DNA from: Girardia tigrina
Taxonomy: Eukaryota
Direction of reading: 5' to 3'
Length of the DNA stretch: 50,915 nucleotides
NCBI GenBank assembly: GCA_001938485.1
Contig: MQRK01234283.1
Location: forward strand, 1 to 50,915
The notes under the pieces were generated by a model. That model made no database searches. It saw nothing but the letters and a program-made list of their open reading frames with translations, and was not told the origin of the DNA. Of the stretch, positions 3,092-50,770 are shown in pieces. The position numbers were made by a program, and so were the translations under genes. Numbering within the stretch: position 1 is the first letter of the stretch; each line of letters starts with the position of its first letter.

Positions 3092-4357
3092 TGTACAACT
3101 AATTAATTTCGTATTTTTTGTTAAAAAAAACCATTTATTTAAGTATAAAAGTGAAAAAATATTTTATTCAAAATATTGTCCATCGGAAGCGGCAACTTTT
3201 TCCCATCTGTCAGGCAATTTATGGATTTCTCATCTTTTGCACCGAGAAAGTCATCAAGCCATTTTTTTAATATCTTCAACGAAAGGTTCTGCATCGACCG
3301 AATTCTGCATCGACCGAAACAAGTGGTAATCAGAAGGAATTTTCCATCTGGCATTTTCCAAATAATTTTTGACCGGTACTGCAACATGTGGCCGAGCATT
3401 GTCATGATGGAAAATCCATTTCTCGTGTCTGGTCGCCCATTCTGGCCGTTTTTCGGCTATTGCTTGCTTCAAACGTATCAATTGTTGCCTGTATAGCTCT
3501 CCCGTGATCGTCTGGCCCGATTTTAACAGCTCATAGNNNNNNNNNNNNNNNNNNNNNNNNNNNNNNNNNNNNNNNNNNNNNNNNNNNNNNNNNNNNNNNN
3601 NNNNNNNNNNNNNNNNNNNNNNNNNNNNNNNNNNNNNNNNNNNNNNNNNNNNNNNNNNNNNNNNNNNNNNNNNNNNNNNNNNNNNNNNNNNNNNNNNNNN
3701 NNNNNNNNNNNNNNNNNNNNNNNNNNNNNNNNNNNNNNNNNNNNNGTAAAAACGGTTTCTTTTTGTGGCGATTAAGCAGCATTTCAGACATGCAAAATCA
3801 TCTCTCAACGTCTCTCGGTTTCAATTCGTGTGGCACCCAATTTCCTTGTTTCTGAATGTATCCGGCTGCTTTTAAACGTTTAGAAATGGCTTGTTGAGTG
3901 ACTTCCAATGTTTTTCCAAGTTCTTCTTGAGTTTGACATGGATCTTGATCGAGTAATGCCTCCAATTCTTTGTCTTCAAACTTTTTTGATGGACCTGATC
4001 GCTCTTTGTCTTCTGTGTCAAAATCGCCATTTTTAAATCGTGCAAACCAATGCTGTCATACTCTAACCTCTGGAGCATATTCAGGATAAGCTTCTGAGAG
4101 TAAACGATGTGCTTCTGTTGCACTTTTCCTTAAATTAAAGAACAAAAGCAAACCTCCCCGCAAATGCTGTTTTGTTGGAACGTAATTTGACATTTTGACT
4201 GTAATAAAAAAAATTTGTGTGTTTACTAAAATTCAATAAAATTGACTATTGACTAGATAAATAGATATGATGTTAGTAACAAATTCAAAATGAGGTAACA
4301 AATACGAATATAATGTTATTTCGTAACAAATACGAAATTAATTAGTTGTACACCTAA
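3092..4357 (-). mobile_element. Mos1-like (mauritiana subfamily) mariner, disrupted, with an internal N-gap
   Basis: TIRs TGTACAACTAATTAATTTCGTATT (3092) and its reverse complement (~4329-4357). Transposase from ATG at 4193: MSNYVPTKQHLR..WFARFKNGDFD..WVPHEL..FHHDNARPH..PSDYHLFRSMQN. Confidence 0.92.
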
Positions 4358-9186: not shown

Positions 9187-11075
9187 ATGGAAACGGCAGT
9201 TTTGAAATTTAGAAGAAAAAGTTCAAGATGATTATGAAATTCCAGGGAATTTTGGATCCGGCCCCATATCTTCCATTTTTGTTCACGGATGTTCCGTTAT
9301 ATATATACATGGAATTGGATGAAAAGAAACAGAGCAACTGTGAAGAAGTACTGCAAATCTTGGACAATTCATTCGGATTAACCAGATGATCTGCGTACAA
9401 CAAACTGATTAATTTGAAATATTACGAAGGACAAACTATTGACGATTACGTTTCTCAAGTAAAGATGTTGGCATCAAAAATCGACGATCTGACCAAGGCG
9501 GCCTTTATGGCTGGATTGCCGTTCGAGTTGCAATTGAATTTAGAGCAGACCGGTGATCAAGATTTAACCGAAATGGTTGAATATAGTCGTCGGTATTTAG
9601 GAATTTAAAAATGCGTCACACAAAGTTCAATGTCAGCGGTACAAAACGTTGGTGATGGAAAGAACGTTTCTAAAGAACGAGGTGAGGTCAGCGGCGATAG
9701 AAGGAGTTCCTTTACAAAACCCCGTGTGCCACATGACGGAAATCTGGTACAAACAAGGGTAAACCACTATGACAATTCTCAGCGGCAATCTAATGGACAA
9801 ATAATTTGCTTTAAATGTAAGCAACTTGGACATATAGCAAAATATGCAAGTCTGGAAACGGACAGGGAAGTTTGTAGGCGCCGGCTCTTCCCTCTGACAT
9901 TTGAGGCGCAGCCAACCATGACTGTGATTGTTAACAACAAGTCGGTTACAGCGTTAATAGATTCGGGTTGCTCAAAAACTGTTGTTTTGAAAGGGTTGAT
10001 CAAGGGAAACTCGTTACAGTCAAATGAGCAAAGAATTGTTTTGGCTAATGGCGATGATATGTGTGGGGATAAGAGATGTAGAATTGACTATATACAATAG
10101 AACTATGAAAGTAGAATGTTCTGTCATGAAATACTTACCCTATGATTTGAGAATTTTAATTGGTATGGATGTTATAAGTAAACTTGGGGATGTGAAAATT
10201 AATTAGGGTGTTATCGAATTTGGTGTGTGTGTAGGAGAAGGACAAAAGAAGGCTGGTGACAATATGAGTTGTGTCACGGGTGTTGTGCCAAGAGTTAGCC
10301 TGAACAAACACAATTATGAGATTGAATTTAAGGATAATTGGACGGTTAAATGGAAGTGGAAGGATGAAGCGCCGATTTATCTACCAATTCGACTTTCGAC
10401 CTTTAAGGATGACAAATCGAAAGACATAGCTACAATGAAAATCCTTGAGGAGTGGATGAAGAAGGGTTATTTAATCGATTATGACGAGAAGGAAATGGGT
10501 AAATCGATAGAATCTATACCCATATTTGGAATATTGCAAGTTAACAAATCCAAGATAAGACCGATCTTTAATTTTAGGAAATTGAACAATTATCTAGACG
10601 TGTACAGTGGCTCAGCAGATATATGTTTGGAAAAACTTCGTACCTGGCGGCGAAAAGGATCAAGATTTTCCATGCTTGATTTATCAGATATATGTATATG
10701 CGTATATGCAGATTTGCGTTCACAAGGAAATGTGGCGTTATCAATCATGTATCATTAATGGAAAAAAGTACGCTCTAACCAGGATGGGCTTTGGTTTAAA
10801 TATCGCTCCGACCATTATGACTGAAATTGTCAAGTGGATTTTAAATTCTGATTCTAGAGCACGTGAAAACACCGATTCGTACATCGATGACATTTACGTT
10901 GACGAATCTACAATCACAGTTGACGAAATTAGAATGCTGTTCGAGAAATTTAGTCTTAAATGCAAAAAACCGGAAAATCTCTCAATGGATAAAGAGGTGC
11001 GAGTGTTGGGAGTAAAAGTCTTTAAAGATAAGAATTCGGTGAGATGGATGAGAGATGAAATGAAATATTTAACAT
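9187..11075 (+). mobile_element. Ty3/Gypsy-like LTR retrotransposon gag-protease-RT remnant, frameshifted and 3'-truncated
   Basis: Zinc knuckle CFKCKQLGHIAKY, aspartic protease ALIDSGC, RT motifs RPIFNFRKLN, RMGFGLNIAP and YIDDI. Confidence 0.92.
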
Positions 11076-11163
11076 GAAAAAATATAGATAATTATTTGTT
11101 TAAATAATGTCTATTTTAAAAGTATTTTAGTGAAAAATAAATTTTAATAGATTTGTGATTCGT
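11058..11163 (+). repeat. ~105-bp direct repeat, right copy, flanking the Gypsy remnant
   Basis: Near-identical to 9016-9120. Confidence 0.9.
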
Positions 11164-15967: not shown

Positions 15968-17950
15968 AGGTGGTACGCGAGCTACTGTTCAGTGTTACGC
16001 GGTCGGTGGGTAATTTTTTTTAAGTTTAGTTATTACACGGACGGCAACCTTCTTATAATGTCTTTTTGGAAATACTTTAGTATTGCCATTCGGGTATCAA
16101 ATTAAAGCTAATCTTATTTTAAGCTTTTTGGCATCAAGATTCCTATCTCAATTCATCATAGTTTCGTCAAAAAAACAATTTAAAACTAATTTATAAATTA
16201 ATTAAATTAAAGCATTTAATTAAATATTATGTAAAATGTGGTATTTAATTTATTTTAAAATTACTATGTGTAAAAATAATGTTCAATGTAATGTTTTTGA
16301 TATTTTAAATTTAAATTGTTTCAATTATTTTTTTAAAACATTTATCAACATTTTGATGAAGTTTTAGTTTTTATAAAATTAAATAACATTACATAAAAAC
16401 ATTTGTTTAAATACGTGTATATACGAATATATACGTATGGTTATATTCATAACTAATTTATTACCCCAATTAGAAAGTCTGATTTGTTATTTTACGAGAT
16501 TTTCAGAGATGTTCTTTTTGCTACTCGAGGAGTGTGGAAAAAATAACCAATTGCGGCCACATGTATTGTGTGACTTGTTTAAAGGATATATACCGCTGCT
16601 ACATGTGCCGTGAACTAATAGATACAAATAAGATTGTATCAATATTATATTAACAAAATTGGAATTATGAAATTTAAATAAAATCTAAATTGTTGTTCAA
16701 TTGTTGTTTGTTCAATTGTACGATCAATTGTTGTCGGTCTTTAAAATTCGAAATTGTGGTATCAAGTATTTTTTTTATTTTGAATCAATATCGAATCCTT
16801 GATGTTCGATCATTTATTGTTAGATTACAGAAATTTTTTAATCCTTCTAAGTCGTGAGAAAAATTTTCCGTTATTTTATTATTATTTAACGAAACAACTA
16901 ACAAAATCAATATTCAAATTTGAAGGCTTTATTTTCTTAATTGAAAATGGTACATAAAGGATATTATTTTTAATTTTAAAAAGAAAGGATATCTCTTTTT
17001 CCCAAGGAACGCCCTCGTGAGTCTCTCATCATTAACAACTCACCACTCAACTCAATATACCCAGCCAAGTAGAGGAATTCGAGACAACTTTTCAACCCAA
17101 GAACATAACACCTCTAATTCAAACATTTCAACTCCAAAAAATAAAAAGTCTGTTTGATTCCAACAAACAAAAAAAATTTTCTTTCCAAAAAATCCTACAA
17201 TTTTTTTAAAACAAAAGTAATGACAATGATGGATTTCAAAAACAAAATTTTCTCTTTCCAAAACAACAACCAATCAACTGAGACAAAAATTTTAAATGGC
17301 CAATTATAAAGACCTTGAATTACTTATCAAAATTTATTACGCTGTGGTATTAATTTTCATTTTTATTGTCAAACCTGATTTAGCAATAAGGCATTGTTTT
17401 ACTAAATTATTTATTTATTTTTTTTACTTTTTCTGTACCTTTTTTTCTGTTTCGAATTTTGCGTAAAATAATAAACTGTAATTTTTTCCTTGTAACACAA
17501 TATCCAAGCTCTTGTTTGTTTATTTTATGTGATCCCTGCTCGATCATTCTCTCTTCCATACATGTCCTTCTACGATATTCCTTGTTCATGACAAAGTATA
17601 TATAGTGTATATATAGAACGGATGCTTAAAGGCACAAAAATGCAATTATGAGTAAAATAACACTTGAACGCTTCATACGCTACCCAGAATTAGTACATTC
17701 ACATATTCCAATATTCATTCTTCTGTAAAACAAAGAATTTCAAAAAAGGTTGATTGTGCTGTTTATTATCTATAATAATTTATAAAATATAATGATAACT
17801 ATATTCTTATTATGTATTTTCTGCTCCAATTTGCATGAGCACAAATGTCATATTGTGATTTGATCTCCATGTGCAGCTCCGGGCACCAAAAAATCGATTT
17901 GTGAAAAGTTTTTCTAAAATGTTGACACTATTGTATCAAAAATTGGACTC

Positions 17951-17980
17951 GTCTAGAGGGCGCCATGGCGCCCTAGCGAC
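17951..17980. other. GC-rich terminal palindrome/hairpin
   Basis: GTCTAG-AGGGCGCCATGGCGCCCT-AGCGAC: perfect 18-bp palindromic core with imperfect outer arms, abutting the left ITR. Confidence 0.85.
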
Positions 17981-18223
17981 AGCAATCCCCTCAAACTCCC
18001 CACCTTTTGTTTTAAATCAACGCCAAGCAGTGTTTGGGATTATTGATTTTTCGCGAGAGTATATACGGGGAGTGGGGAGTTGGGGAGTGAACCTTTTTAC
18101 TTATATATAAGAAAAAAAATCAAGGAGTAATTAATATATTATGATAATATATTAACTCCCCAACTCCCCACTCCCCATATATAGTCTGCCATATCAATCG
18201 ATAATATTATATATTGATTTATT
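17981..18223 (+). repeat. Left inverted terminal repeat (243 bp)
   Basis: Reverse complement of 23784-24026; no mismatch found by eye. Confidence 0.95.
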
Positions 18224-18289
18224 AAATGTACTTTTATATTAATGATGACGTCATAGATAATATTAACACGTAACAATAACTAAAATTTA

Positions 18290-19624
18290 TTAAAGAGAAC
18301 AGGTTTTGTGTTCGAACTTAGACACAGCATAATAGGGATCATTAATGTATCTTTGATTGTCAGCAATGGTAGGAAATATTGTTGGCACATCAGTTACATT
18401 GTCTTTGGTGTTGACGAAATTGAATACCGGTACAGCGTACGGTTGTTTTGGAACTACCCATCTACTTGAATTCTGATCTCTTGATTTGGCCTCAGGGAAA
18501 TACGGAGCATTACCTTCTGGGTTTTTCCCGTAAAAATCAAAAGTATATTCGACCTCCCAGTTAAATTGAACTGTTAAATTCATTTTATTTCCTTGTGGTC
18601 CAACCATAGTGTTTAACTTGTAAAAAAACATGGGCATTGGATTGTGTTCTGACACATCGGGAGCTGTAGCTACGGATTTGTAGTATTCATAGTCTGCCTT
18701 TGCCTGAGTGTCAATTACACTGTCTATAATGCGACTAGATTGACCAGTAACCGAATCAATTGCAATCGTATTTATCTTCACTACACCTTCAGCCCAATTA
18801 TGAAACTGCATGCCACCCGGTAATCGTACATATCTCTTAAATTTCGTTAAAGTTCGTCTACCTAGTGCCAAAGAGAATCCATCTCTAAAAGGCGAATACT
18901 TTTTACAACCGAAATAATCGAATCTAGTATAGAATGGTGATTTTTTCTCATTAGCTATTAATGGTTCACATTGACTATCAAATTCTACTATGTGTCTCGG
19001 ATATTTACTTTTGCATTGATACTCATACACAACATCTTCACCAGCATTACAATTAGTAATTCTAACCAGTGACGATGTTTCGAATGGATGTATCCAACCT
19101 TTGCGTGTTAAAGTAACAGTGCCAGGATAGAATAATGCACTGTTTACATCATAACCGTTGTGTAATGATCTTTCATTACAAAATATATCAGTGAATGCCC
19201 TAGTTTTATTGGGTGCTTCAGCACACGGTCCAAATAAATGCATGTTGTCTATGTATGTTAAAAACTCTACTTGTGCCTGTAGACCTGTGAATTGAGTCGG
19301 TCCACCTTCACCTGTGGCTTGTATATTGAATATACGATATTTCATACTTTTCGGTTTAAACCAATTATATGTTGATATGACCATAGTTGACATGGGTTTT
19401 CCACCAGCAATGCAGTACGGCCACCAATATTCCAGAGGTTCGTTATACCATTCATTGGTTTCCGTGGATTTGATGCATTTCGCACCACAACATGTAAACG
19501 TCATCGTGGTCGAGTCAGCCGGAGACGGAAATTGATCATGTCCTTGACTGGCCTCTAGTGCATTAGATCCACCGCCCGCAGATGCTGCGCCTGGAGTCGG
19601 TTGAGGAGGAGCTGGAGTAGCCAT
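18290..19624 (-). CDS. Parvovirus-like major capsid protein (VP2-like jelly roll), 444 aa
   Basis: Gly/Ala-rich N-terminus; NWFKPKSMKYRIFNIQ resembles AAV NWGFRPKRLNFKLFNIQ; TYID resembles VFTD; HNPMPMFFYKL resembles HPPPQILIKN; LTVQFNWEV resembles VSVEIEWEL. AATAAA overlaps the stop. Confidence 0.85.
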   Translation of the reverse strand: MATPAPPQPTPGAASAGGGSNALEASQGHDQFPSPADSTTMTFTCCGAKCIKSTETNEWYNEPLEYWWPYCIAGGKPMSTMVISTYNWFKPKSMKYRIFNIQATGEGGPTQFTGLQAQVEFLTYIDNMHLFGPCAEAPNKTRAFTDIFCNERSLHNGYDVNSALFYPGTVTLTRKGWIHPFETSSLVRITNCNAGEDVVYEYQCKSKYPRHIVEFDSQCEPLIANEKKSPFYTRFDYFGCKKYSPFRDGFSLALGRRTLTKFKRYVRLPGGMQFHNWAEGVVKINTIAIDSVTGQSSRIIDSVIDTQAKADYEYYKSVATAPDVSEHNPMPMFFYKLNTMVGPQGNKMNLTVQFNWEVEYTFDFYGKNPEGNAPYFPEAKSRDQNSSRWVVPKQPYAVPVFNFVNTKDNVTDVPTIFPTIADNQRYINDPYYAVSKFEHKTCSL

Positions 19625-21378
19625 ATTGAAATCAATAAATTTAAAAATAATAAATCAATACTAAATAAATCATTCCAGTCTGCATTGTAGTCCAAATTTA
19701 AAAGTACATCATGATTTATTTTGAATTGATGGTCGTAATGTTCATGTCTAGCTTGTTCATTTTCACTGAACCACACAAATGCACCATAATCCTCATCGTA
19801 AATATTTAATTTTTTTTCCTCGTTCTTTCTCCACTGCATATATTGTTTATGATGTAGTTTATTTTTATTTACAAATATTCCACCCAATAACTCATACAAT
19901 TCCTCTTTTTCATATATATCTAATTTTCTTTTTTGAGATTCCTTTAAGTAATGATAAACACCATTTTTTACTTGTACAGCCAATAATCTCATTTGCTTAG
20001 CAGTATATCTTTTCTTAACAATAGGAGTATTTCGTTTGCTGCGCTGTAATACTTTGTTCTCCTCAGTTTCATCCTCTCTATCATCTATATGAATATGATC
20101 TTTAGGTTGAGGTGGAATTTCTAATAATGGATGTCTCGGTACATAAGCACTAGCTTGCCAATCATAAATAAATTCAGGATTATACTTGTGTTTTAATGTT
20201 AACATTTTAGAAAAAACATGTGTATCGTCATATACTATATTTGATACTCGTGTTTGTTCCTCAGGTGTCAATTTATCATAATCCCATAGCTCTCCAATTA
20301 ATTTTTCATATTCATCAGACTTTTGTTGACGTCTTTTAAAGTATGGTTCATTACATTTATAGTTGTAACAACGAGCTTTTTCAATTAAAGTAGTGATTGA
20401 ATTTCCTATTGCCTCATGATCTATATGATTACCACTCCATTTATTACCCTTAACTTTAAATTTTATTTTATTGCCAATATATGGCGGTAATCTTCTAATG
20501 AAATTACCAAATCTTTTAGAATTAAGATATTGTTTAAAATAGGCCATCCTGTGCGTTCGGAACTTTTGTTTGTTATAATAATTGAATTGATTACCGACAC
20601 CACTAATATCAAATTTTCTATTACTACTCGGTATTATCATCATATTACTTCTTTGATTATAATTAAATGCATGAATTTTTTTGAAATTTGCATAATTATT
20701 CATTCTGGTTTTCAAAGCAGTTCGCATAAATAATTGTTGAGTATTTTTTATATTTATTTTATACGGTACACTTTTAGAATTTAAAGAAAATTGTGAAGAT
20801 GACATATTCTTCTGTATTTTATATAATGCAAATGGTTTTGGCAATACTTTATCAATTAATTTATGTATATATAAATTTTCTTGAGTAAGATCTGGCATCG
20901 AGGCTGTACCGACATTTTTTTCTGTGAAATATGTATAAGCCATATATAGATAGTTTTGAATATATTTTTTAATATCTTGATCTTTTCTCATAGATTTATA
21001 TTCACTATTTTCATCAATGAACGACTTAATATGAAAAACTAACTCAATTATTTTCTTTTCAGTGATTTCCAACTTTGTTAAACTTTTATTAGGTATATTT
21101 CGTAATTCTTGTAACAATTCCTGATCAGCAGTCATTCGAATTTTTTTATTAGTAGATTCATAGGCAATGTCATGCTTCCGACAGGCCTCATCTATAGCAT
21201 TCAACGGTTCATAACCCGGATTTGGTTGCTTAGTTGCTTTATTTAATCGAACTTTTGTACATGTACCAGGACCACAATAATTATATCCATACATATGCAT
21301 CTCTCCAGGCATCAATTTTTTAAAGTTAGCCTTTCTCTGTGACGTTGAATTCTTCAATTTAAACTCGTTTAATTTCAT
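19555..21378 (-). CDS. Viral phospholipase A2-domain protein (VP1-unique-like minor capsid protein), 607 aa
   Basis: Calcium loop YNYCGPGT and catalytic DEACRKHDIAY near the N-terminus, followed by a long basic region of unknown nature; ORF is intact. Confidence 0.85.
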   Translation of the reverse strand: MKLNEFKLKNSTSQRKANFKKLMPGEMHMYGYNYCGPGTCTKVRLNKATKQPNPGYEPLNAIDEACRKHDIAYESTNKKIRMTADQELLQELRNIPNKSLTKLEITEKKIIELVFHIKSFIDENSEYKSMRKDQDIKKYIQNYLYMAYTYFTEKNVGTASMPDLTQENLYIHKLIDKVLPKPFALYKIQKNMSSSQFSLNSKSVPYKINIKNTQQLFMRTALKTRMNNYANFKKIHAFNYNQRSNMMIIPSSNRKFDISGVGNQFNYYNKQKFRTHRMAYFKQYLNSKRFGNFIRRLPPYIGNKIKFKVKGNKWSGNHIDHEAIGNSITTLIEKARCYNYKCNEPYFKRRQQKSDEYEKLIGELWDYDKLTPEEQTRVSNIVYDDTHVFSKMLTLKHKYNPEFIYDWQASAYVPRHPLLEIPPQPKDHIHIDDREDETEENKVLQRSKRNTPIVKKRYTAKQMRLLAVQVKNGVYHYLKESQKRKLDIYEKEELYELLGGIFVNKNKLHHKQYMQWRKNEEKKLNIYDEDYGAFVWFSENEQARHEHYDHQFKINHDVLLNLDYNADWNDLFSIDLLFLNLLISIWLLQLLLNRLQAQHLRAVDLMH

Positions 21379-21531
21379 TTTCTGAAAAAATCAAAATAAT
21401 ATCCTGCAACGTAATATATTTAATATTACATTAATAATTTTATAAACCTCCTCGTAATATAAAATATTGATCCATTATTTATATATATATATAACGAAAT
21501 CAATTATATTTTTTTCAATATATTATTTAAA
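21379..21531. promoter_or_regulatory. Divergent intergenic region (putative bidirectional promoter; contains TAATATTAC at 21421-21429)
   Basis: 153-bp AT-rich spacer between the head-to-head PLA2 and Rep ATGs, with TATA-like tracts. Confidence 0.5.
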
Positions 21532-22978
21532 ATGGTTGATAATATGAAAGACATGATGCCTACGATTTCAAACAATTCAATTATGCCTACGAATTCGAAC
21601 AATTCAATTATGCCTACGAATGCAATCAATTCAATCAGTGAATCGAGATTAGCCGAAGCCCGTAGACGTTACAGAAATTTCCGGTTTTCCATACCCATAT
21701 CCGACTTCGAAAATCGCAGAGAATCACTGATGAAATTATGGGAAAAGAATACCGTCTTTATAATAGGCCAAGAAGAGCTTTCTCATAATAATCATCACCA
21801 TTTGGAGATGTTCGCAACGATGACAAATAGTAAATTTTTGACCTGGTAATTCATTTAATCACCGGTTTAATAATTTATAGGCATGACATACGGGAGCGCC
21901 AGGAAGCAGCTGGACGTACCATTCGTCTCCGGCGTCGTCGACACAGAGGTTCAGGCGGCCATAGATTACTGCAGTAGAAAATGGCATCAAAATCTTTCTT
22001 GGAAATCGCAGATCTGTGTTTTATGAAAGTCTCTGGCCACATGTGATAAAATGTGAGTCGGCCAGAGACGCGTTAAATGTAGTGAAAGATAACAAGCCTG
22101 AGCTTTATTTCTTAAAACGGAAGGCTCTCAGTGAGTCTTTCGATGCTGAATTTGGTAAAAGTACGAAAGCTATTTATAAAAATTTTAATGTCCCACATGA
22201 AGATGTGTGGGACAACTTGACACATGTATTCATAGGCCCCACAGGCATAGGAAAGAGTAATTTCGCGTTGTCGCATTTTAGTAAACCCGTCCATGTAACA
22301 AATTTACAAAACTTTTCTAGGATTTCCGATAACCCGGAAATCACGGACGGAATAGTGATTGACGACGTCGAACTGTCTAAACTGTCTGCCCACAAATTGT
22401 TGCAAATTGTGGACAAACAGTTTGAGCACGGTGTCGACGTCAAATACGGGTATGGGTACATACCCGCTAACTTGCCGAGAATAGTCATACTAAATTCACT
22501 AGAATATTTTTGGCCCGAAAAGATTTCCTCAACTTTACGTTCGGCCATTAATAGAAGAATTAAAATACATTATTATAATGCCCGATTATACGACATCAAT
22601 CATGACAATAATAATGTAGATAACAGTGTAGTGAAATCTGTTTATAAACCTAGTTCAGAAATTAAATTGGCTCCTAAGAAAGTGACTCCATTAAGTAATA
22701 AACCGACTGTATCGACTAATACTGATACTGGTGATTGTGCCACATGGATGTCTAAAAAGCGATTAAAAAATGTCGATTTGACTAACGAGAATGATACAAA
22801 AGAAATAGATGTCCCCAAGACGTGCAGAAACCTTGGCATGAAGAACCCTCTGCCTGAGCAGTATGAGGGATTCTTAAAGTGGTTGGCACGCAAGAAAAAC
22901 AAGGAACTCATTGAATACATTGAAGTAGACAAATTATACAAAACGGATATTGATGACAGTGATTATGAGGACTTGTAA
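21532..22978 (+). CDS. rep: CRESS-DNA (circovirus-like) Rep: HUH endonuclease plus SF3 helicase; predicted intron 21830-21880 and one frameshift near 21976
   Basis: Motif I RNFRFSI, IIGQEE, motif II HHHLEMF, motif III AAIDYCS; Walker A GPTGIGKS, Walker B IVIDDV, B' VDVKYG, motif C IVILN, Arg finger AINRR. AATAAA at 23025. Confidence 0.88.
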
Positions 22979-23093
22979 TGTTTTTATTAGTTTTTATTTG
23001 ATCATGTTTTTTTTTGAAGAGTTGAATAAAGTTTTGTTATTGTTAATTGTCTTGTTTAATTTACACAATAGATAATAACTTGAACTAAAATCT

Positions 23094-23756
23094 TTATTTA
23101 AATACACGTCTAAGTAAATTCATCTTAACTTTATAAAATAAATGAGTATAATCATATATATTAACCCCTACATTAATAACAACTGATTTGACACAATGAA
23201 TATACACAGAACGATTCAATAGCGGTAATCTAATTTCGGAAGTGTACTTCCAGATAGGTTGATTATTTGTCAAAAAGATAGGAATTCTATCCATTTTAAC
23301 TTTTTGTTTATGCTTCTGACTAATTTTTACACAGGGAGACGACTCACAAATCAATTTCATATAATCAGCATTACGTACATCTAAAATAATCTCCTCACCG
23401 ATGGCACAATTTTTGCCCACCAAGTCCTCAAAACAAAACTCAGAATTCAGGTGCATGGTTGTAAAGAACCCGCAGTTAAGTCCGGCAGTCCAAATTTGGA
23501 TAAAGAGAGTCTTTCCCGCATTTGAAACTCCGTCAATAATGACTGTTGTTGTTTTTCCTGCCCGTAATAGTAGGATCGTACCCAACGCAAGAATACGATA
23601 ATTGACTCTATCAGTTTCTTCGTTAATCGTAACATTATTAAGACTGTTATGTTGCCCAAGTAATATCCGGTGATCATTATTGATAGTAAACTCGTTAGAA
23701 TCCAAAAAATCGACAACAAACTTTTCAAGAACATCCTCTACCAGACTCTCTAGCAT
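23094..23756 (-). CDS. Stand-alone SF3 helicase, parvovirus NS1 C-terminal-like, 220 aa
   Basis: Walker A GVSNAGKT, Walker B AIGEE (parvoviral EE type), B' KHK, motif C IFLTNN, LLNR. No HUH domain. ATG lies next to the right ITR; AATAAA overlaps the stop. Confidence 0.85.
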   Translation of the reverse strand: MLESLVEDVLEKFVVDFLDSNEFTINNDHRILLGQHNSLNNVTINEETDRVNYRILALGTILLLRAGKTTTVIIDGVSNAGKTLFIQIWTAGLNCGFFTTMHLNSEFCFEDLVGKNCAIGEEIILDVRNADYMKLICESSPCVKISQKHKQKVKMDRIPIFLTNNQPIWKYTSEIRLPLLNRSVYIHCVKSVVINVGVNIYDYTHLFYKVKMNLLRRVFK

Positions 23757-23783
23757 TAAATATTAAAAGTACAAATATAGATC

Positions 23784-24026
23784 AATAAATCAATATATAA
23801 TATTATCGATTGATATGGCAGACTATATATGGGGAGTGGGGAGTTGGGGAGTTAATATATTATCATAATATATTAATTACTCCTTGATTTTTTTTCTTAT
23901 ATATAAGTAAAAAGGTTCACTCCCCAACTCCCCACTCCCCGTATATACTCTCGCGAAAAATCAATAATCCCAAACACTGCTTGGCGTTGATTTAAAACAA
24001 AAGGTGGGGAGTTTGAGGGGATTGCT
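23784..24026 (-). repeat. Right inverted terminal repeat (243 bp)
   Basis: Reverse complement of 17981-18223. Confidence 0.95.
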
Positions 24027-47935: not shown

Positions 47936-49292
47936 CAGGGTGCGGCAGCTATTTGAGAACAAAATGACATAAAGTTCAAAAAATGAATATACAACAGAAA
48001 AATAACATTTATTACAATTTAAAATTTTACATATATTAACTAGTACATAAAGGACTACATCATTCAATGAAACCGCCATTAGCGGCAATAACGGCCTCTA
48101 CACGTCGTCGAAACCGACTGCAGGCAGTAATTAGATGGGTCTTTGGAATGTTTGCCATTGNNNNNNNNNNNNNNNNNNNNNNNNNNNNNNNNNNNNNNNN
48201 NNNNNNNNNNNNNNNNNNNNNNNNNNNNNNNNNNNNNNNNNNNNNNNNNNNNNNNNNNNNNNNNNNNNNNNNNNNNNNNNNNNNNNNNNNNNNNNNNNNN
48301 NNNNNNNNNNNNNNNNNNNNNNNNNNNNNNNNNNNNNNNNNNNNNNNNNNNNNNNNNNNNNNNNNNNNNNNNNNNNNNNNNNNNNNNNNNNNNNNNNNNN
48401 NNNNNNNNNNNNNNNNNNNNNNNNNNNNNNNNNNNNNNNNNNNNNNNNNNNNNNNNNNNNNNNNNNNNNNNNNNNNNNNNNNNNNNNNNNNNNNNNNNNN
48501 NNNNNNNNNNNNNNNNNNNNNNNNNNNNNNNNNNNNNNNNNNNNNNNNNNNNNNNNNNNNNNNNNNNNNNNNNNNNNNNNNNNNNNNNNNNNNNNNNNNN
48601 NNNNNNNNNNNNNNNNNNNNNNNNNNNNNNNNNNNNNNNNNNNNNNNNNNNNNNNNNNNNNNNNNNNNNNNNNNNNNNNNNNNNNNNNNNNNNNNNNNNN
48701 NNNNNNNNNNNNNNNNNNNNNNNNNNNNNNNNNNNNNNNNNNNNNNNNNNNNNNNNNNNNNNNNNNNNNNNNNNNNNNNNNNNNNNNNNNNNNNNNNNNN
48801 NNNNNNNNNNNNNNNNNNNNNNNNNNNNNNNNNNNNNNNNNNNNNNNNNNNATATGATGTGTAACGAAGGTCCTCATGAACCACCCGCCGGATAGTAGCT
48901 TCGTCAACCTGCAGTTCCCTGCCCAGTGACCTCATAGACTTCCCAGGGTTCTCATCGATGACAGATTGGATTCGGCTTACAAATTCTGCATTTCTGATAC
49001 TGTCCGAACGTCTACAAACTTGTTTCCGTTGCGAAGCTTTAGCCCCATCACCCTTTCGCAGCTTCTAATTCTGTACGAACTTTAAAAACAAACGACCGGG
49101 CGACTTTCAAAAATGTAGGAATTTCTGAATCGGTGTGTCCTGCAGCTAATGACACAATAACTGCATGCCTTTTCATTTCACTCGTAAGAGTAGCTTCTGC
49201 CATGTCTACCAGCAAAAATAAAATTATGTAATTATAACACACAAAAGATATGGTGTCTATGTTACGTGTTCTCAAATAGCTGCCGCACCCTG
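47936..49292 (-). mobile_element. maT/DD37D-like Tc1-mariner element with an internal N-gap
   Basis: TIRs CAGGGTGCGGCAGCTATTTGAGAAC with TA TSD; SMRSLGRELQVDEATIRRVVHEDL and ACSRFRRRVEAVIAANGGFIE. The catalytic core is hidden in Ns, so the subfamily is inferred. Confidence 0.85.
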
Positions 49293-49368: not shown

Positions 49369-49826
49369 TACATGACGGAAATCTGGTACAAACAAGGGTT
49401 AACCGCTATGAAAATTCTCAGCGGTAATCTAATGGACAAATAATTTGCTATAAATGTAAGCAAGTTGGACATATAGCAAAATATTGCAAGTCGGGAAACG
49501 GACAGGGAAGTTTGTAGGCGCCGGCTCTCTCCCTCTGACATTTCCGGCGCTGCCAACCATGACTGTCATTGTTAACAACAAGTCGGTTACAGCGTTGATA
49601 GATTCGGGTTGCTCAAAAACTGTTGTTTTGAAAGGTTTGATCAAGGGAAACTCGTTTCAGTCAAATGAGCAAAGAATTGTTTTGGCTAATGGCGATGATA
49701 TATGTGTGGGGATTAGTGATGTGGAATTGACTATATACAATAGAACTATGAAAGTAGAATGTTCTGTCATGAAATACTTACCCTATGATTTGGGAATTTT
49801 AATTGGTATGGATGTTATAAGTGAAC
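49369..49826 (+). mobile_element. Second partial copy of the Gypsy gag-protease region
   Basis: Near-identical to ~9731-10185 (ALIDSGCSKTVVLKG). Confidence 0.9.
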
Positions 49827-50770
49827 TTACTTACACCTTGTCGGACGTAGAGAGCCTTGGAGAGACAAACGAGGACCCTTCAGCGTACTTACCGAGGATT
49901 GCCCGCATCACCTCTGCAAGGTTCTTCGTCACTGATTTTAGAATTTGCATATATTTACGACTCAATCTTGTTATTATATGGATTATTATATTTACTACGA
50001 TTACTACCATTACGTTTATATTGCTAATATATTAATTATTATTATTATTATTCTTATATAAGGAGCACATTCGCGATTTTGTGTATATGTGGATGACCGC
50101 GTAGATTGCTATTGTAATTAGGTACTATTATACTTTATCAACGCCTCAACCATGACCTCCGAATTATTTCCGAATCGAACTCCGAATTATTTAAATCATG
50201 AAATTTTATCTAAACAAAATTTACTCAATGATTTCACCGATTTAAATATTTACTCTATTTCGATCATTTTAGTGATTATTCACTAATGGCCGTATTGCAA
50301 ATTTTTCTGATCAAAAGGGTGTTTTTGATTACTTTAAAGATTTTCCATTTTTCATTATGTACCTTATGAATATAAATAAAAATAATTATTTTGGATATAT
50401 TTACTTATATTGGAAAATCTGGGCTATGTTGAGATTCTCTAAATAGAAAAGTAATAAAATATATAAAATTAGTTTTCCGCTCTCCTAAATAAAAATAAAT
50501 TTAAAAAGTAATAAATAAATAAATCAAATAAATAAATTAATAATCAGGACGCGTAATCCCATTTTAACCTTCCCTTTGTTTGAGCACATTGCTCAGGGAC
50601 GCGAGGCGGTTAGTTGGAATAATAACAATGAAAGCAAACAAATAAATAGGTATATAAATTTTAGTAAATAATTATTATTTATTATTATTATTAATTTAAT
50701 CTATATTACTAATTTTATCTCTATTTATTTTTTTAGTATATTATTATTATTATTACTATTATTATATTTA

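What the first reader, a model, noticed from the sequence alone, without database searches (positions are those of the whole stretch)
23094..23756. Two SF3 helicases in one 6-kb genome; the endonuclease-less one may be a dedicated packaging motor
Seen: this 220-aa ORF has a parvoviral-style Walker B (EE), whereas the Rep helicase has CRESS-style DD. It has its own ATG immediately inside the ITR and no room for an HUH domain. Established: AAV Rep52/40 are helicase-only proteins that pump ssDNA into preformed capsids. Inference: labour is divided, with the NS1-derived helicase retained with the capsid for packaging and the acquired CRESS Rep handling nicking and replication.
Basis: partly seen in the sequence, partly recalled or inferred. 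Interest (0 to 1): 0.8.

Follow-up and report, generated by a model that had tools for sequence, protein, structure and literature searches.

The report
Stand-alone parvovirus-type helicase in planarian-like element
The 220-residue ORF is an intact helicase-only gene of the parvovirus NS1 type, sitting beside a separate circovirus-like Rep in a 6-kb integrated virus-like element; this two-helicase layout was already described in planarian elements (PEVE/PIVE), and the proposed packaging role is plausible but untested.

Summary
Window 17981-24026 is a 6046-bp element with perfect 243-nt inverted terminal repeats. It carries a capsid-like ORF, a phospholipase-A2 ORF, a CRESS-like HUH+SF3 Rep, and the 220-aa ORF (23094-23756, minus strand).

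The ORF starts 27 nt inside the right repeat, with an in-frame stop three codons upstream, so no nuclease domain fits. All SF3 motifs are present. The model (pLDDT 95.6) best matches AAV Rep68/Rep40, B19 NS1 and papillomavirus E1 helicases.

It is not a one-off truncation. The seven best of 284 relatives have no N-terminal extension over 19 residues, and four match both its ends. One is the 227-aa "helicase" of the planarian virus-like element PEVE. Full-length NS1 proteins appear only at half the score.

The layout is not new: PEVE (2002), PIVE (Repbase 2008) and a 2024 "parvovirus with auxiliary CressRep" group have it, and bidnaviruses also have a stand-alone NS1-type helicase.

The packaging-motor reading fits the anatomy but nothing here tests it; a replicative role is nearly as likely. 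In this copy the Rep frame is interrupted twice.

The parts
17981..18223 (.). Left inverted terminal repeat (243 nt). It has an internal hairpin whose 36-nt arms carry three GGGGAGT-type repeats.
   Evidence: I1 is 100% complementary to 23784-24026, and I2 is the internal hairpin; folding gives -47.3 kcal/mol, z -7.7, with 0 of 200 shuffles as good.
18290..19624 (-). Capsid-like ORF of 444 aa with a glycine-rich N-terminus. Assigned by position only.
   Evidence: ORF. No Pfam hit and no significant PDB sequence hit.
19555..21378 (-). ORF of 607 aa with a parvovirus-VP1-type phospholipase A2 domain. It overlaps the capsid-like ORF by 70 nt.
   Evidence: Phospholip_A2_4 (PF08398), E 4.4e-12, 46.6 bits against a cut-off of 23.9.
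21379..21531 (.). AT-rich divergent intergenic region between the structural genes and Rep. It holds a (TA)n/TATA run and one TAATATTAC.
   Evidence: The local hairpin is not better than shuffles (z -1.5).
21532..22978 (+). CRESS-like Rep gene (HUH endonuclease part plus SF3 helicase with a DD Walker B). The reading frame is interrupted twice in this copy: one short stretch holding 4 in-frame stops, possibly a short intron, and one frame change.
   Evidence: Continuous relatives P0151, P0153 and P0155 align to the window in two frames. Viral_Rep hits in relatives P0154 and P0158. Circovirus-type Rep chains 8xms and 7lar are the only PDB hits.
22979..23093 (.). Convergent intergenic region. It has AATAAA on the + strand at 23025 after Rep, and AATAAA on the - strand starting at 23098, overlapping the stop of the short helicase.
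   Evidence: This hexamer is common in AT-rich DNA, so the evidence is weak.
23094..23756 (-). The finding: an intact stand-alone SF3 helicase of 220 aa, of the parvovirus NS1/Rep type.
23571..23756 (-). N-terminal helical region (aa 1-62), equivalent to the helical bundle that precedes the ATPase core in SF3 helicases.
   Evidence: helices at residues 2-20, 27-39 and 50-62, with pLDDT 84-97; family profile positions 22-196 align to B19 NS1 residues 271-449.
23508..23531 (-). Walker A, GVSNAGKT (aa 76-83).
   Evidence: G76 and K82 are invariant and G81 is at least 90% conserved in 53 sequences.
23391..23408 (-). Walker B, ending in E121-E122 (aa 117-122).
   Evidence: E122 is invariant in 53 sequences. 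Position 121 is E or D in the ten closest relatives.
23313..23315 (-). K148, the conserved lysine of the beta-hairpin (B' region).
   Evidence: At least 90% conserved in 53 sequences. Lies between strands 144-147 and 150-154 of the model. Aligned to the corresponding lysine of AAV Rep40.
23262..23279 (-). Motif C, ending in N165 (aa 160-165).
   Evidence: N165 is at least 90% conserved in 53 sequences and invariant in the ten closest.
23211..23213 (-). R182, the candidate arginine finger.
   Evidence: At least 90% conserved.
23757..23783 (.). 27-nt spacer between the ATG and the ITR. The frame is closed by a stop three codons upstream of the ATG.
   Evidence: Read directly. A TATA-like heptamer on the - strand starts at 23799, inside the ITR and 43 nt upstream of the ATG.
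23784..24026 (.). Right inverted terminal repeat (243 nt).
   Evidence: I1, I3.

Best explanation
Shown: the ORF is a complete, stand-alone SF3 (AAA+) helicase gene of the parvovirus NS1/Rep lineage. It belongs to a small family of roughly 220-245-residue helicase-only proteins that includes the 'helicase' of the planarian element PEVE. It sits in an integrated, ITR-flanked, 6-kb element of the PEVE/PIVE kind. That element also encodes a parvovirus-type PLA2 protein, a capsid-like ORF and a separate CRESS-like HUH+SF3 Rep.

Inferred: the protein forms a ring-shaped, ATP-driven single-strand DNA translocase. This rests on the helical bundle plus ATPase core, with the Walker A, Walker B, hairpin lysine, motif C and arginine finger all in place. 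It has no DNA-nicking or origin-binding domain, so it must act on DNA that another protein, the HUH Rep, has nicked and marked. It has its own transcription unit, entered from the right ITR and ending at an AATAAA that overlaps its stop codon.

Most likely job (inference only): it serves the parvovirus-type virion module, threading single-stranded genomes into preformed capsids in the way AAV Rep52/Rep40 do. The CRESS-like Rep would do the nicking and replicative unwinding.

In this particular copy the Rep frame is interrupted, so the copy is probably not self-sufficient.
For: Identity:
- Parvo_NS1 is above Pfam's cut-off.
- The family profile hits B19 NS1 at 5.5e-17, AAV Rep40/68 at about 1e-16 and E1 at 2e-13. 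No CRESS Rep appears among the significant hits.
- The model has pLDDT 95.6 and pTM 0.90.
- Foldseek's best PDB matches are AAV2 Rep68/Rep40, E1 and B19 NS1, at E 1e-8 to 1e-6 over 190-225 columns.
- The best viral-model match is a 227-aa protein at 29% identity.

Activity: G76, K82 and E122 are invariant in 53 sequences. K68, G81, K148, N165 and R182 are at least 90% conserved.

Helicase-only by design:
- The 7 best relatives have at most 19 residues of N-terminal extension.
- P0001, P0002, P0003 and P0005 match both termini within -6 to +19 residues.
- The first long NS1-type protein ranks 8th, at half the score.

Partner nuclease: the Rep pieces are collinear with the continuous 354-aa relative P0155. 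Relatives hit Viral_Rep.

Module argument for packaging:
- NS1-type helicases without the nuclease domain also persist next to parvovirus-type capsids in bidnaviruses, where a PolB replaced the nuclease (PMC4061559; bidnavirus hits).
- A solved AAV2 Rep40-capsid complex exists (9rwg, listed).
- That AAV Rep52/40 package DNA is established knowledge, not tested here.
Against: - No result here separates packaging from other helicase roles.
- In autonomous parvoviruses and densoviruses a single NS1 helicase serves replication, transcription control and packaging. Keeping the helicase therefore need not mean packaging.
- The capsid-like ORF has no detectable sequence similarity to any solved capsid and its fold was not predicted. 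The premise 'parvovirus-type capsid with a portal-like pore' rests only on the PLA2 domain and gene position.
- The Rep already has its own SF3 helicase, yet CRESS Rep helicases are not known to package either.
- Gene neighbourhoods of the relatives were not seen. Co-occurrence of the short helicase with a capsid gene is documented only for this copy, and only by a figure legend for PIVE.
- Grouping of the six short proteins is weak in a crude tree: 63 of 300 bootstraps exactly, 129 of 300 loosely.
- One closer relative, P0004, looks decayed in the P-loop.
Confidence: 0.4

Rival explanations
1. Replicative or hairpin-unwinding helicase. The short NS1-type helicase is the motor that melts and unwinds the long ITR hairpins during rolling-hairpin replication. 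The CRESS-like Rep contributes mainly the HUH nick. Packaging, if it needs a motor at all, would not be this protein's defining role.
For: - The ITRs form very stable hairpins (z -7.7) of the kind NS1/Rep helicases handle.
- The closest solved folds are replicative forms: AAV Rep68 on DNA, and E1 on ssDNA and forks.
- All catalytic residues are conserved.
- Bidnaviruses keep a stand-alone NS1-type helicase next to a DNA polymerase, where a replicative role is equally natural (PMC4061559).
Against: - The Rep carries a complete SF3 helicase of its own, with Walker A, DD and motif C conserved in relatives. A second replicative helicase therefore looks redundant.
- The short protein lacks any origin-binding domain to find the ITR.
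Confidence: 0.3
2. Relic. The ORF is the leftover 3' half of an NS1 gene in a dead endogenous element. It is evolving neutrally and is open only because the insertion is young.
For: - The element is integrated among transposon debris.
- The ITRs are 100% identical, which fits a recent insertion.
- The Rep frame is interrupted in this copy.
- A closer relative, P0004, appears decayed.
Against: - Independent relatives at 27-37% identity keep the same start, the same end and the same catalytic residues. Neutral decay would not preserve these.
- One of them comes from an extrachromosomal planarian element and is annotated as its helicase.
- The ORF has a start codon three codons after an in-frame stop and fills the space up to the ITR.
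Confidence: 0.07
3. Regulator or host-interaction factor. The protein uses its ATPase fold mainly for transcriptional control of the element's promoters or for interference with host replication, as parvoviral NS1 also does, and not as a DNA pump.
For: Parvoviral NS1/Rep proteins are multifunctional (established knowledge). The gene has its own transcription unit next to an ITR that may hold a promoter.
Against: The residues conserved across the family are exactly those of the translocase machinery, including the hairpin lysine and arginine finger. There is no DNA-binding or activation domain beyond the helicase module.
Confidence: 0.08

Closest known systems
[quoted passage not shown] Its helicase is NP_476522.1 (= P0003, 227 aa).
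   Same: - A short stand-alone helicase of the same family. It scores E 2.5e-21 at 30% identity and is collinear from residue 2 to 195, with the same length within 7 residues.
- From my own recollection of Rebrikov et al. 2002 (BMC Genomics 3:15; not held in the library), PEVE also carries a circovirus-like Rep and inverted repeats, so it has the same two-helicase layout.
   Different: - PEVE was described as extrachromosomal and about 7.5 kb with two unique regions (my recollection). The window's element is integrated and 6.0 kb.
- Identity is only about 30%.
- I did not retrieve the PEVE Rep, so Rep-to-Rep homology is untested.
PIVE, the integrated virus-like element of Schmidtea mediterranea (Repbase 2008; discussed in PMC3198968).
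   Same: - An integrated planarian element with terminal inverted repeats and the Parvo_NS1 / PPV_E1_C and Parvo_coat_N (PF08398) domains. This is the same domain set found here.
- PIVE_1p groups with the PEVE small segment and with parvoviruses.
- The window's 25-35% GC and its mariner and LTR debris fit a planarian genome. That is an inference.
   Different: I could not compare sequences because Repbase is not available here. Whether the window holds PIVE itself or a relative is open.
AAV Rep52/Rep40
   Same: - A helicase-only protein of the same SF3 lineage.
- Best fold matches at E 1e-8 to 1e-7 and TM about 0.6 over the whole query.
- Family profile at E 8e-17.
- No origin-binding or nuclease domain.
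   Different: - Rep52/40 are made from an internal promoter of the same rep ORF and share their helicase with the large Reps.
- Here the helicase is a separate gene on the opposite strand. It is unrelated, beyond the P-loop, to the helicase of the element's own Rep.
- Packaging activity is not tested here.
Bidnavirus stand-alone S3H (Bombyx mori bidensovirus VD1 ORF2)
   Same: An NS1-type S3H encoded as a stand-alone protein, with the NS1 nuclease domain lacking, next to a parvovirus-type capsid (PMC4061559). Bidnavirus proteins are among the best fold matches (ranks 6, 19 and 20).
   Different: The partner replicase there is a protein-primed PolB. Here it is a CRESS-like HUH Rep, and no ORF of the element hits a polymerase family. 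Bidnavirus terminal repeats do not form hairpins; these ITRs do.
'Parvo3071' group: parvoviruses with an auxiliary CressRep (PMC11071296)
   Same: A parvovirus-class NS1 helicase gene and a CRESS-type Rep in one genome.
   Different: The preprint text does not say whether that NS1 lacks the nuclease domain. No sequences were compared.
Papillomavirus E1 helicase domain
   Same: PPV_E1_C scores about as well as Parvo_NS1 on the closest relatives. E1 is among the best folds.
   Different: The profile search ranks NS1/Rep above E1, at 1e-16 against 1e-13. All ten longer relatives tested are Parvo_NS1-first. The acidic pair is EE or DE.

Membership tests
SF3 helicase of the parvovirus NS1/Rep type | Walker A, GxxxxGK[ST] | tested here: met
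   GVSNAGKT at aa 76-83. G76 and K82 are invariant in 53 sequences.
SF3 helicase of the parvovirus NS1/Rep type | Walker B acidic pair after a hydrophobic strand | tested here: met
   E121-E122. E122 is invariant. Position 121 is E or D in close relatives.
SF3 helicase of the parvovirus NS1/Rep type | B' hairpin lysine, motif C asparagine and arginine finger | tested here: met
   K148, N165 and R182 are each at least 90% conserved. They align to the same residues of AAV Rep40 and B19 NS1.
SF3 helicase of the parvovirus NS1/Rep type | Significant match to the family profile and fold | tested here: met
   Parvo_NS1 scores 23.3 bits against a cut-off of 20. The family profile hits NS1/Rep40 at about 1e-16. 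The AF2 model has pLDDT 95.6, with best folds AAV Rep68/40.
Full-length parvovirus NS1/Rep78-type initiator | N-terminal HUH nuclease / origin-binding domain in the same protein | tested here: not met
   The protein starts at the helical bundle. There are 27 nt to the ITR and a stop three codons upstream. The closest relatives are equally short.
AAV Rep52/Rep40-type packaging helicase | Helicase-only polypeptide lacking the origin-binding domain | tested here: met
AAV Rep52/Rep40-type packaging helicase | Made from an internal promoter of the rep ORF, sharing its helicase with the large Rep | tested here: not met
   It is a separate gene on the opposite strand. It shares only the P-loop with the Rep's helicase.
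AAV Rep52/Rep40-type packaging helicase | Docks on the capsid fivefold axis and translocates ssDNA into preformed capsids | not testable with these tools
Activity cannot be read from sequence.
PEVE/PIVE-type planarian virus-like elements | Short stand-alone helicase homologous to the PEVE helicase | tested here: met
   P0003 (NP_476522.1) scores E 2.5e-21 and is collinear end to end.
PEVE/PIVE-type planarian virus-like elements | A second, circovirus-like Rep in the same element, flanked by inverted repeats | tested here: met
   Rep at 21532-22978, with CRESS-like relatives. 243-nt ITRs. That PEVE has the same pair comes from my own recollection of the 2002 paper, which is not held in the library.
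PEVE/PIVE-type planarian virus-like elements | Host is a planarian | tested here: inconclusive
   The flanks are AT-rich eukaryotic DNA with mariner and LTR-retroelement debris. No host gene that names the organism was found.
Bidnaviridae | Protein-primed family-B DNA polymerase gene | tested here: not met
   No ORF of the element hits a polymerase family. The only large unassigned ORFs are the PLA2 protein and the capsid-like ORF.
CRESS-DNA Rep (the neighbouring gene) | HUH endonuclease domain fused to an SF3 helicase | tested here: inconclusive
   - Relatives P0154 and P0158 hit Viral_Rep at 7e-5 and 3e-5, scoring 23.5 and 24.6 bits, just under the cut-off of 26.
- The only PDB hits of the family profile are circovirus-type Reps, at E about 0.02.
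- Candidate motifs are visible in the alignment.
- The window's own copy is interrupted.
CRESS-DNA viruses | Circular genome with a nonanucleotide in a stem-loop origin | tested here: not met
   The element is linear with ITRs. TAATATTAY occurs, but at 15 sites against 6.1 expected in this AT-rich window, and the local hairpins are no better than shuffles.

The most novel reading that the evidence does not exclude
This would be a natural separation of functions that parvoviruses normally keep in one protein. In the PEVE/PIVE lineage, nicking and replication would have passed to a CRESS-type Rep. A minimal NS1-derived helicase would survive only because the parvovirus-type capsid needs its own matched DNA pump. 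The packaging motor and the capsid would then be one co-inherited module, independent of the replicase. Bidnaviruses would be a second, parallel case.
Probability: 0.3. Interest if true: 0.6.

Novelty: new member of a known kind. Interest (0 to 1): 0.3.

Why it matters
If the short helicase serves the capsid alone, these elements would show in nature which NS1 function is tied to the virion and which to replication. That question is hard to separate in ordinary parvoviruses, where one protein does both. It would also explain why NS1-type helicases persist whenever a parvovirus-type capsid is combined with a foreign replicase: PolB in bidnaviruses, and a CRESS Rep here.

As it stands, the value of this window is more modest. 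It holds a complete, well-bounded integrated copy of a PEVE/PIVE-like element, with both ITRs intact. It also gives evidence that the helicase-only form is a conserved family trait.

Tried and rejected
- **Single-sequence structure prediction** failed (pLDDT 32.6). It was replaced by a 53-sequence alignment.
- **The word-index protein search** found no relatives of 121-385 aa. The full HMMER scan did, so the blank was a sensitivity limit and not an absence.
- **Similarity between the two helicases:** none beyond the P-loop. A recent duplication is rejected.
- **A CRESS-type origin** (nonanucleotide in a stem-loop) in the ITRs or the intergenic region: motifs exist but are not above what this AT-rich DNA gives, and the hairpins are not better than shuffles. 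Inconclusive.
- **Extension of the ITRs or a target-site duplication:** the flanks outside the ITRs do not align and no duplication is evident.
- **Other copies in the window:** none.
- **Capsid identity by sequence:** nothing.
- **A crude NJ tree of helicase cores** groups the six short proteins, but with weak bootstrap support (one search timed out).
- **The 2002 PEVE paper** is not held under three identifiers. What I say of its content is my recollection.
- **A simple GT..AG stretch next to the first Rep interruption:** read by eye, it does not restore the frame.
Full report
**1. What is there**

The window is AT-rich eukaryotic DNA, 20-44% GC per kb. It contains pieces of a mariner-type transposase and of LTR-retroelement gag, protease and RT.

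Inside it lies a sharply bounded element, 17981-24026 (6046 bp). Its two 243-nt ends are 100% complementary to each other (I1).
- Each end contains an internal hairpin with 36-nt arms that carry three GGGGAGT-type repeats.
- As single-stranded DNA one ITR folds at -47.3 kcal/mol, with z -7.7.

Between the ITRs, in order, are:
- a capsid-like ORF, 18290-19624 (-), 444 aa, with no family hit;
- an ORF with a parvovirus-VP1-type phospholipase A2 domain, 19555-21378 (-), PF08398 at 4.4e-12;
- a Rep gene on the + strand, 21532-22978;
- the 220-aa ORF of the finding, 23094-23756 (-).

No second copy of any of these genes is in the window.

**2. The observation**

It is correct.
- **Position.** The ORF's ATG is 27 nt from the inner end of the right ITR. 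The frame is closed by a stop three codons upstream. A nuclease domain cannot be encoded upstream.
- **Open frame.** The chance of 220 open codons in DNA of this composition is about 1e-7.
- **Short helicase motifs.** Walker A is GVSNAGKT. The Walker B ends in EE. Motif C ends in N165, and R182 lies where the arginine finger is expected.
- **Rep motifs.** Walker A is GPTGIGKS and the Walker B is a DD type.
- **Separate lineages.** The two helicases are not detectably related beyond the P-loop. BLASTP gives E 0.9. The profile-profile comparison gives probability 13% over 16 columns.

**3. What the short protein is**

*By sequence.*
- It passes Pfam's Parvo_NS1 threshold, 23.3 bits against 20. 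It also touches DUF5906 and PPV_E1_C.
- Alone, it finds B19 NS1 and AAV Rep40/68 in the PDB only weakly, at E 0.009-0.18.
- A profile of it and its nine closest relatives finds B19 NS1 at 5.5e-17 and AAV Rep40/Rep68 at about 1e-16. Papillomavirus E1 follows at 2e-13, and no CRESS Rep appears among the significant hits.

*By structure.*
- With a 53-sequence alignment, AlphaFold2 gives a confident model, pLDDT 95.6 and pTM 0.90.
- The model has three N-terminal helices (residues 2-62), then an alpha/beta ATPase core and a C-terminal helix.
- Foldseek against the PDB puts AAV2 Rep68 and Rep40 first, then E1 and B19 NS1, at E 1e-8 to 1e-6. The alignments span 190-225 columns, which is the whole protein.
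- Against predicted viral structures, the best match is a 227-aa protein at 29% identity, probably the PEVE helicase.

*By conservation.*
- Across 53 sequences G76, K82 and E122 are invariant. K68, G81, F107, K148, P159, N165 and R182 are at least 90% conserved.
- These include the ATP-binding, hydrolysis, DNA-hairpin and trans-acting arginine positions of SF3 helicases, as the alignments to Rep40 and NS1 show.

The protein should be an active ring translocase.

**4. Is it merely truncated?**

The full HMMER scan of 1.84 billion representatives gave 284 relatives at E no greater than 1e-3.

The best are short:
- P0001 (244 aa, 1.5e-31), P0002 (222 aa), P0003 (227 aa) and P0005 (232 aa);
- P0006 (176 aa), plus the fragments P0004 and P0007.

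None of the seven best has more than 19 residues in front of the position equivalent to the query's first residue. P0001, P0002, P0003 and P0005 match both ends within -6 to +19 residues. All begin with Met.

The first long protein (595 aa, matching at its residues 378-510) ranks eighth, at half the bit score. All ten long relatives tested are Parvo_NS1-first by Pfam.

Caveats:
- The relatives come from short contigs of 1.4-4.3 kb, and I did not see their DNA.
- A crude neighbour-joining tree of helicase cores groups the six short proteins, but with weak bootstrap support: 63 of 300 exactly, and 129 of 300 allowing up to three more members.
- P0004 appears to have a shortened P-loop, so decayed copies exist elsewhere.

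**5. The neighbouring Rep**

The word search found a 75%-identical relative (P0151, 366 aa) and then, with a profile, others of 311-368 aa.
- P0155 (354 aa) is one continuous protein. It covers, in order, all three open pieces of the window's Rep.
- P0154 and P0158 hit Viral_Rep (PF02407) at 7e-5 and 3e-5, just below the curated cut-off.
- The only PDB hits of the family profile are circovirus-type Rep chains (8xms, 7lar) at E about 0.02, spanning the whole helicase core.

I accept 'CRESS-like HUH+SF3 Rep' as likely. The statistics are modest.

In this copy the gene is not one open frame. It is interrupted twice: once by a short stretch holding four in-frame stops, and once by a frame change relative to P0151, P0153 and P0155.
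- The first interruption may be a short intron. The ORF calls of the two closest relatives begin at the same methionine just after it.
- The frame change is a break, or possibly an assembly error.

**6. How it most likely works**

*Shown:* a complete SF3 helicase module without nuclease or origin-binding domain. It has its own start next to the ITR, and an AATAAA overlaps its stop. A TATA-like heptamer lies in the ITR 43 nt upstream. These signals are weak evidence in AT-rich DNA.

*Inferred:* it assembles into a ring and moves along single-stranded DNA, using ATP. It must rely on the HUH Rep, which can bind and nick the ITRs, to create its substrate.

The specific job is open. I rank packaging into the parvovirus-type capsid first, at about 0.4, for three reasons:
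- the element already has a second helicase fused to its nuclease;
- NS1-type helicases stripped of their nuclease also persist beside parvovirus-type capsids in bidnaviruses, where the replicase is a PolB (PMC4061559);
- the nearest solved relatives include Rep40, for which a capsid complex is solved (9rwg).

A replicative or hairpin-melting role comes second, at about 0.3. A regulatory role (0.08) and a neutral relic (0.07) follow.

**7. What is already known**

- **PEVE and PIVE.** Liu et al. 2011 (PMC3198968) describe PIVE, an integrated virus-like element of Schmidtea mediterranea (Repbase 2008). It has terminal inverted repeats and Parvo_NS1 / PPV_E1_C / Parvo_coat_N domains. They relate it to PEVE of Girardia tigrina.
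- **PEVE's two helicases.** From my own recollection of Rebrikov et al. 2002, which the library does not hold, PEVE was reported to encode two helicase-like proteins, one circovirus-Rep-like and one E1-like. That is exactly this layout.

The two-helicase architecture is therefore known. The window's element is a member of that kind, and possibly PIVE itself. I could not compare it with Repbase. The window's exact proteins are not in the protein collection.

I did not find the packaging hypothesis stated in the papers I could read, but it remains untested.

**8. Steps left out, and a slip**

- Gene neighbourhoods and dN/dS are therefore missing.
- I did not touch the N runs at 3537-3745 and 48161-48851.
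- Slip: my first notebook entry, written before I knew the Rep was interrupted, gives the bounds of one Rep ORF as listed by the ORF tool. I have left it as it is.

**9. Verdict**

Identity and the 'helicase-only by design' claim hold. The function is unproven and the novelty is overstated.
- Novelty: a new member of a known kind.
- Interest: 0.3.

Noticed in passing
window 21532-22978 (+): The CRESS-like Rep gene of this copy is not one open frame. It has one short stretch with four in-frame stops, perhaps a short intron because the two closest relatives' ORF calls start at the same methionine after it. It also has one frame change relative to three continuous relatives. The other three genes of the element are open.
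   Followed up: partly
window 21553-21635: Three tandem copies of a 27-nt unit (86-100% alike) encode a repeated 9-residue motif. They sit in an N-terminal extension of Rep that the relative P0155 lacks.
   Followed up: no
window 17950-17979: A GC-rich near-palindrome, including a perfect 16-nt palindrome, abuts the outer end of the left ITR in otherwise AT-rich flank. Nothing like it lies outside the right ITR. It folds at -10.1 kcal/mol, z -2.35. It could be host DNA or a remnant of a viral terminus.
   Followed up: partly
window 18066-18087 and 18157-18178; mirrored at 23830-23851 and 23921-23942: The arms of the internal ITR hairpin consist of three GGGGAGT-type repeats. These are candidates for iterated Rep-binding sites.
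   Followed up: no
window 21421-21429; 18201-18210; 23797-23806: One exact TAATATTAC lies in the divergent region between the structural genes and Rep. TAATATTAT lies at the inner end of each ITR. The motif occurs 15 times in the window against 6.1 expected, and the local hairpins are no better than shuffles. An origin role is therefore unsupported.
   Followed up: yes
window 19555-19624: The PLA2 ORF and the capsid-like ORF overlap by 70 nt in different frames. A spliced or frameshifted VP1-like product is conceivable but was not examined. About 490 residues of the 607-aa protein outside the PLA2 domain match no family.
   Followed up: no
window 3254-3808, 9630-11077, 49484-50035: The flanks hold transposon debris. 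There is a mariner-type transposase piece with an N run inside it. There are also retroelement zinc-knuckle, protease and RT pieces in short broken ORFs.
   Followed up: partly
window 48060-48935: Five long 'ORFs' on both strands here are artefacts of the N run 48161-48851, which was left untouched.
   Followed up: yes
protein P0004 (122 aa; not in the window): The fragment most similar to the short helicase (48% identity over 111 residues) seems to lack part of the P-loop. Decaying copies of this gene therefore exist in other genomes.
   Followed up: no
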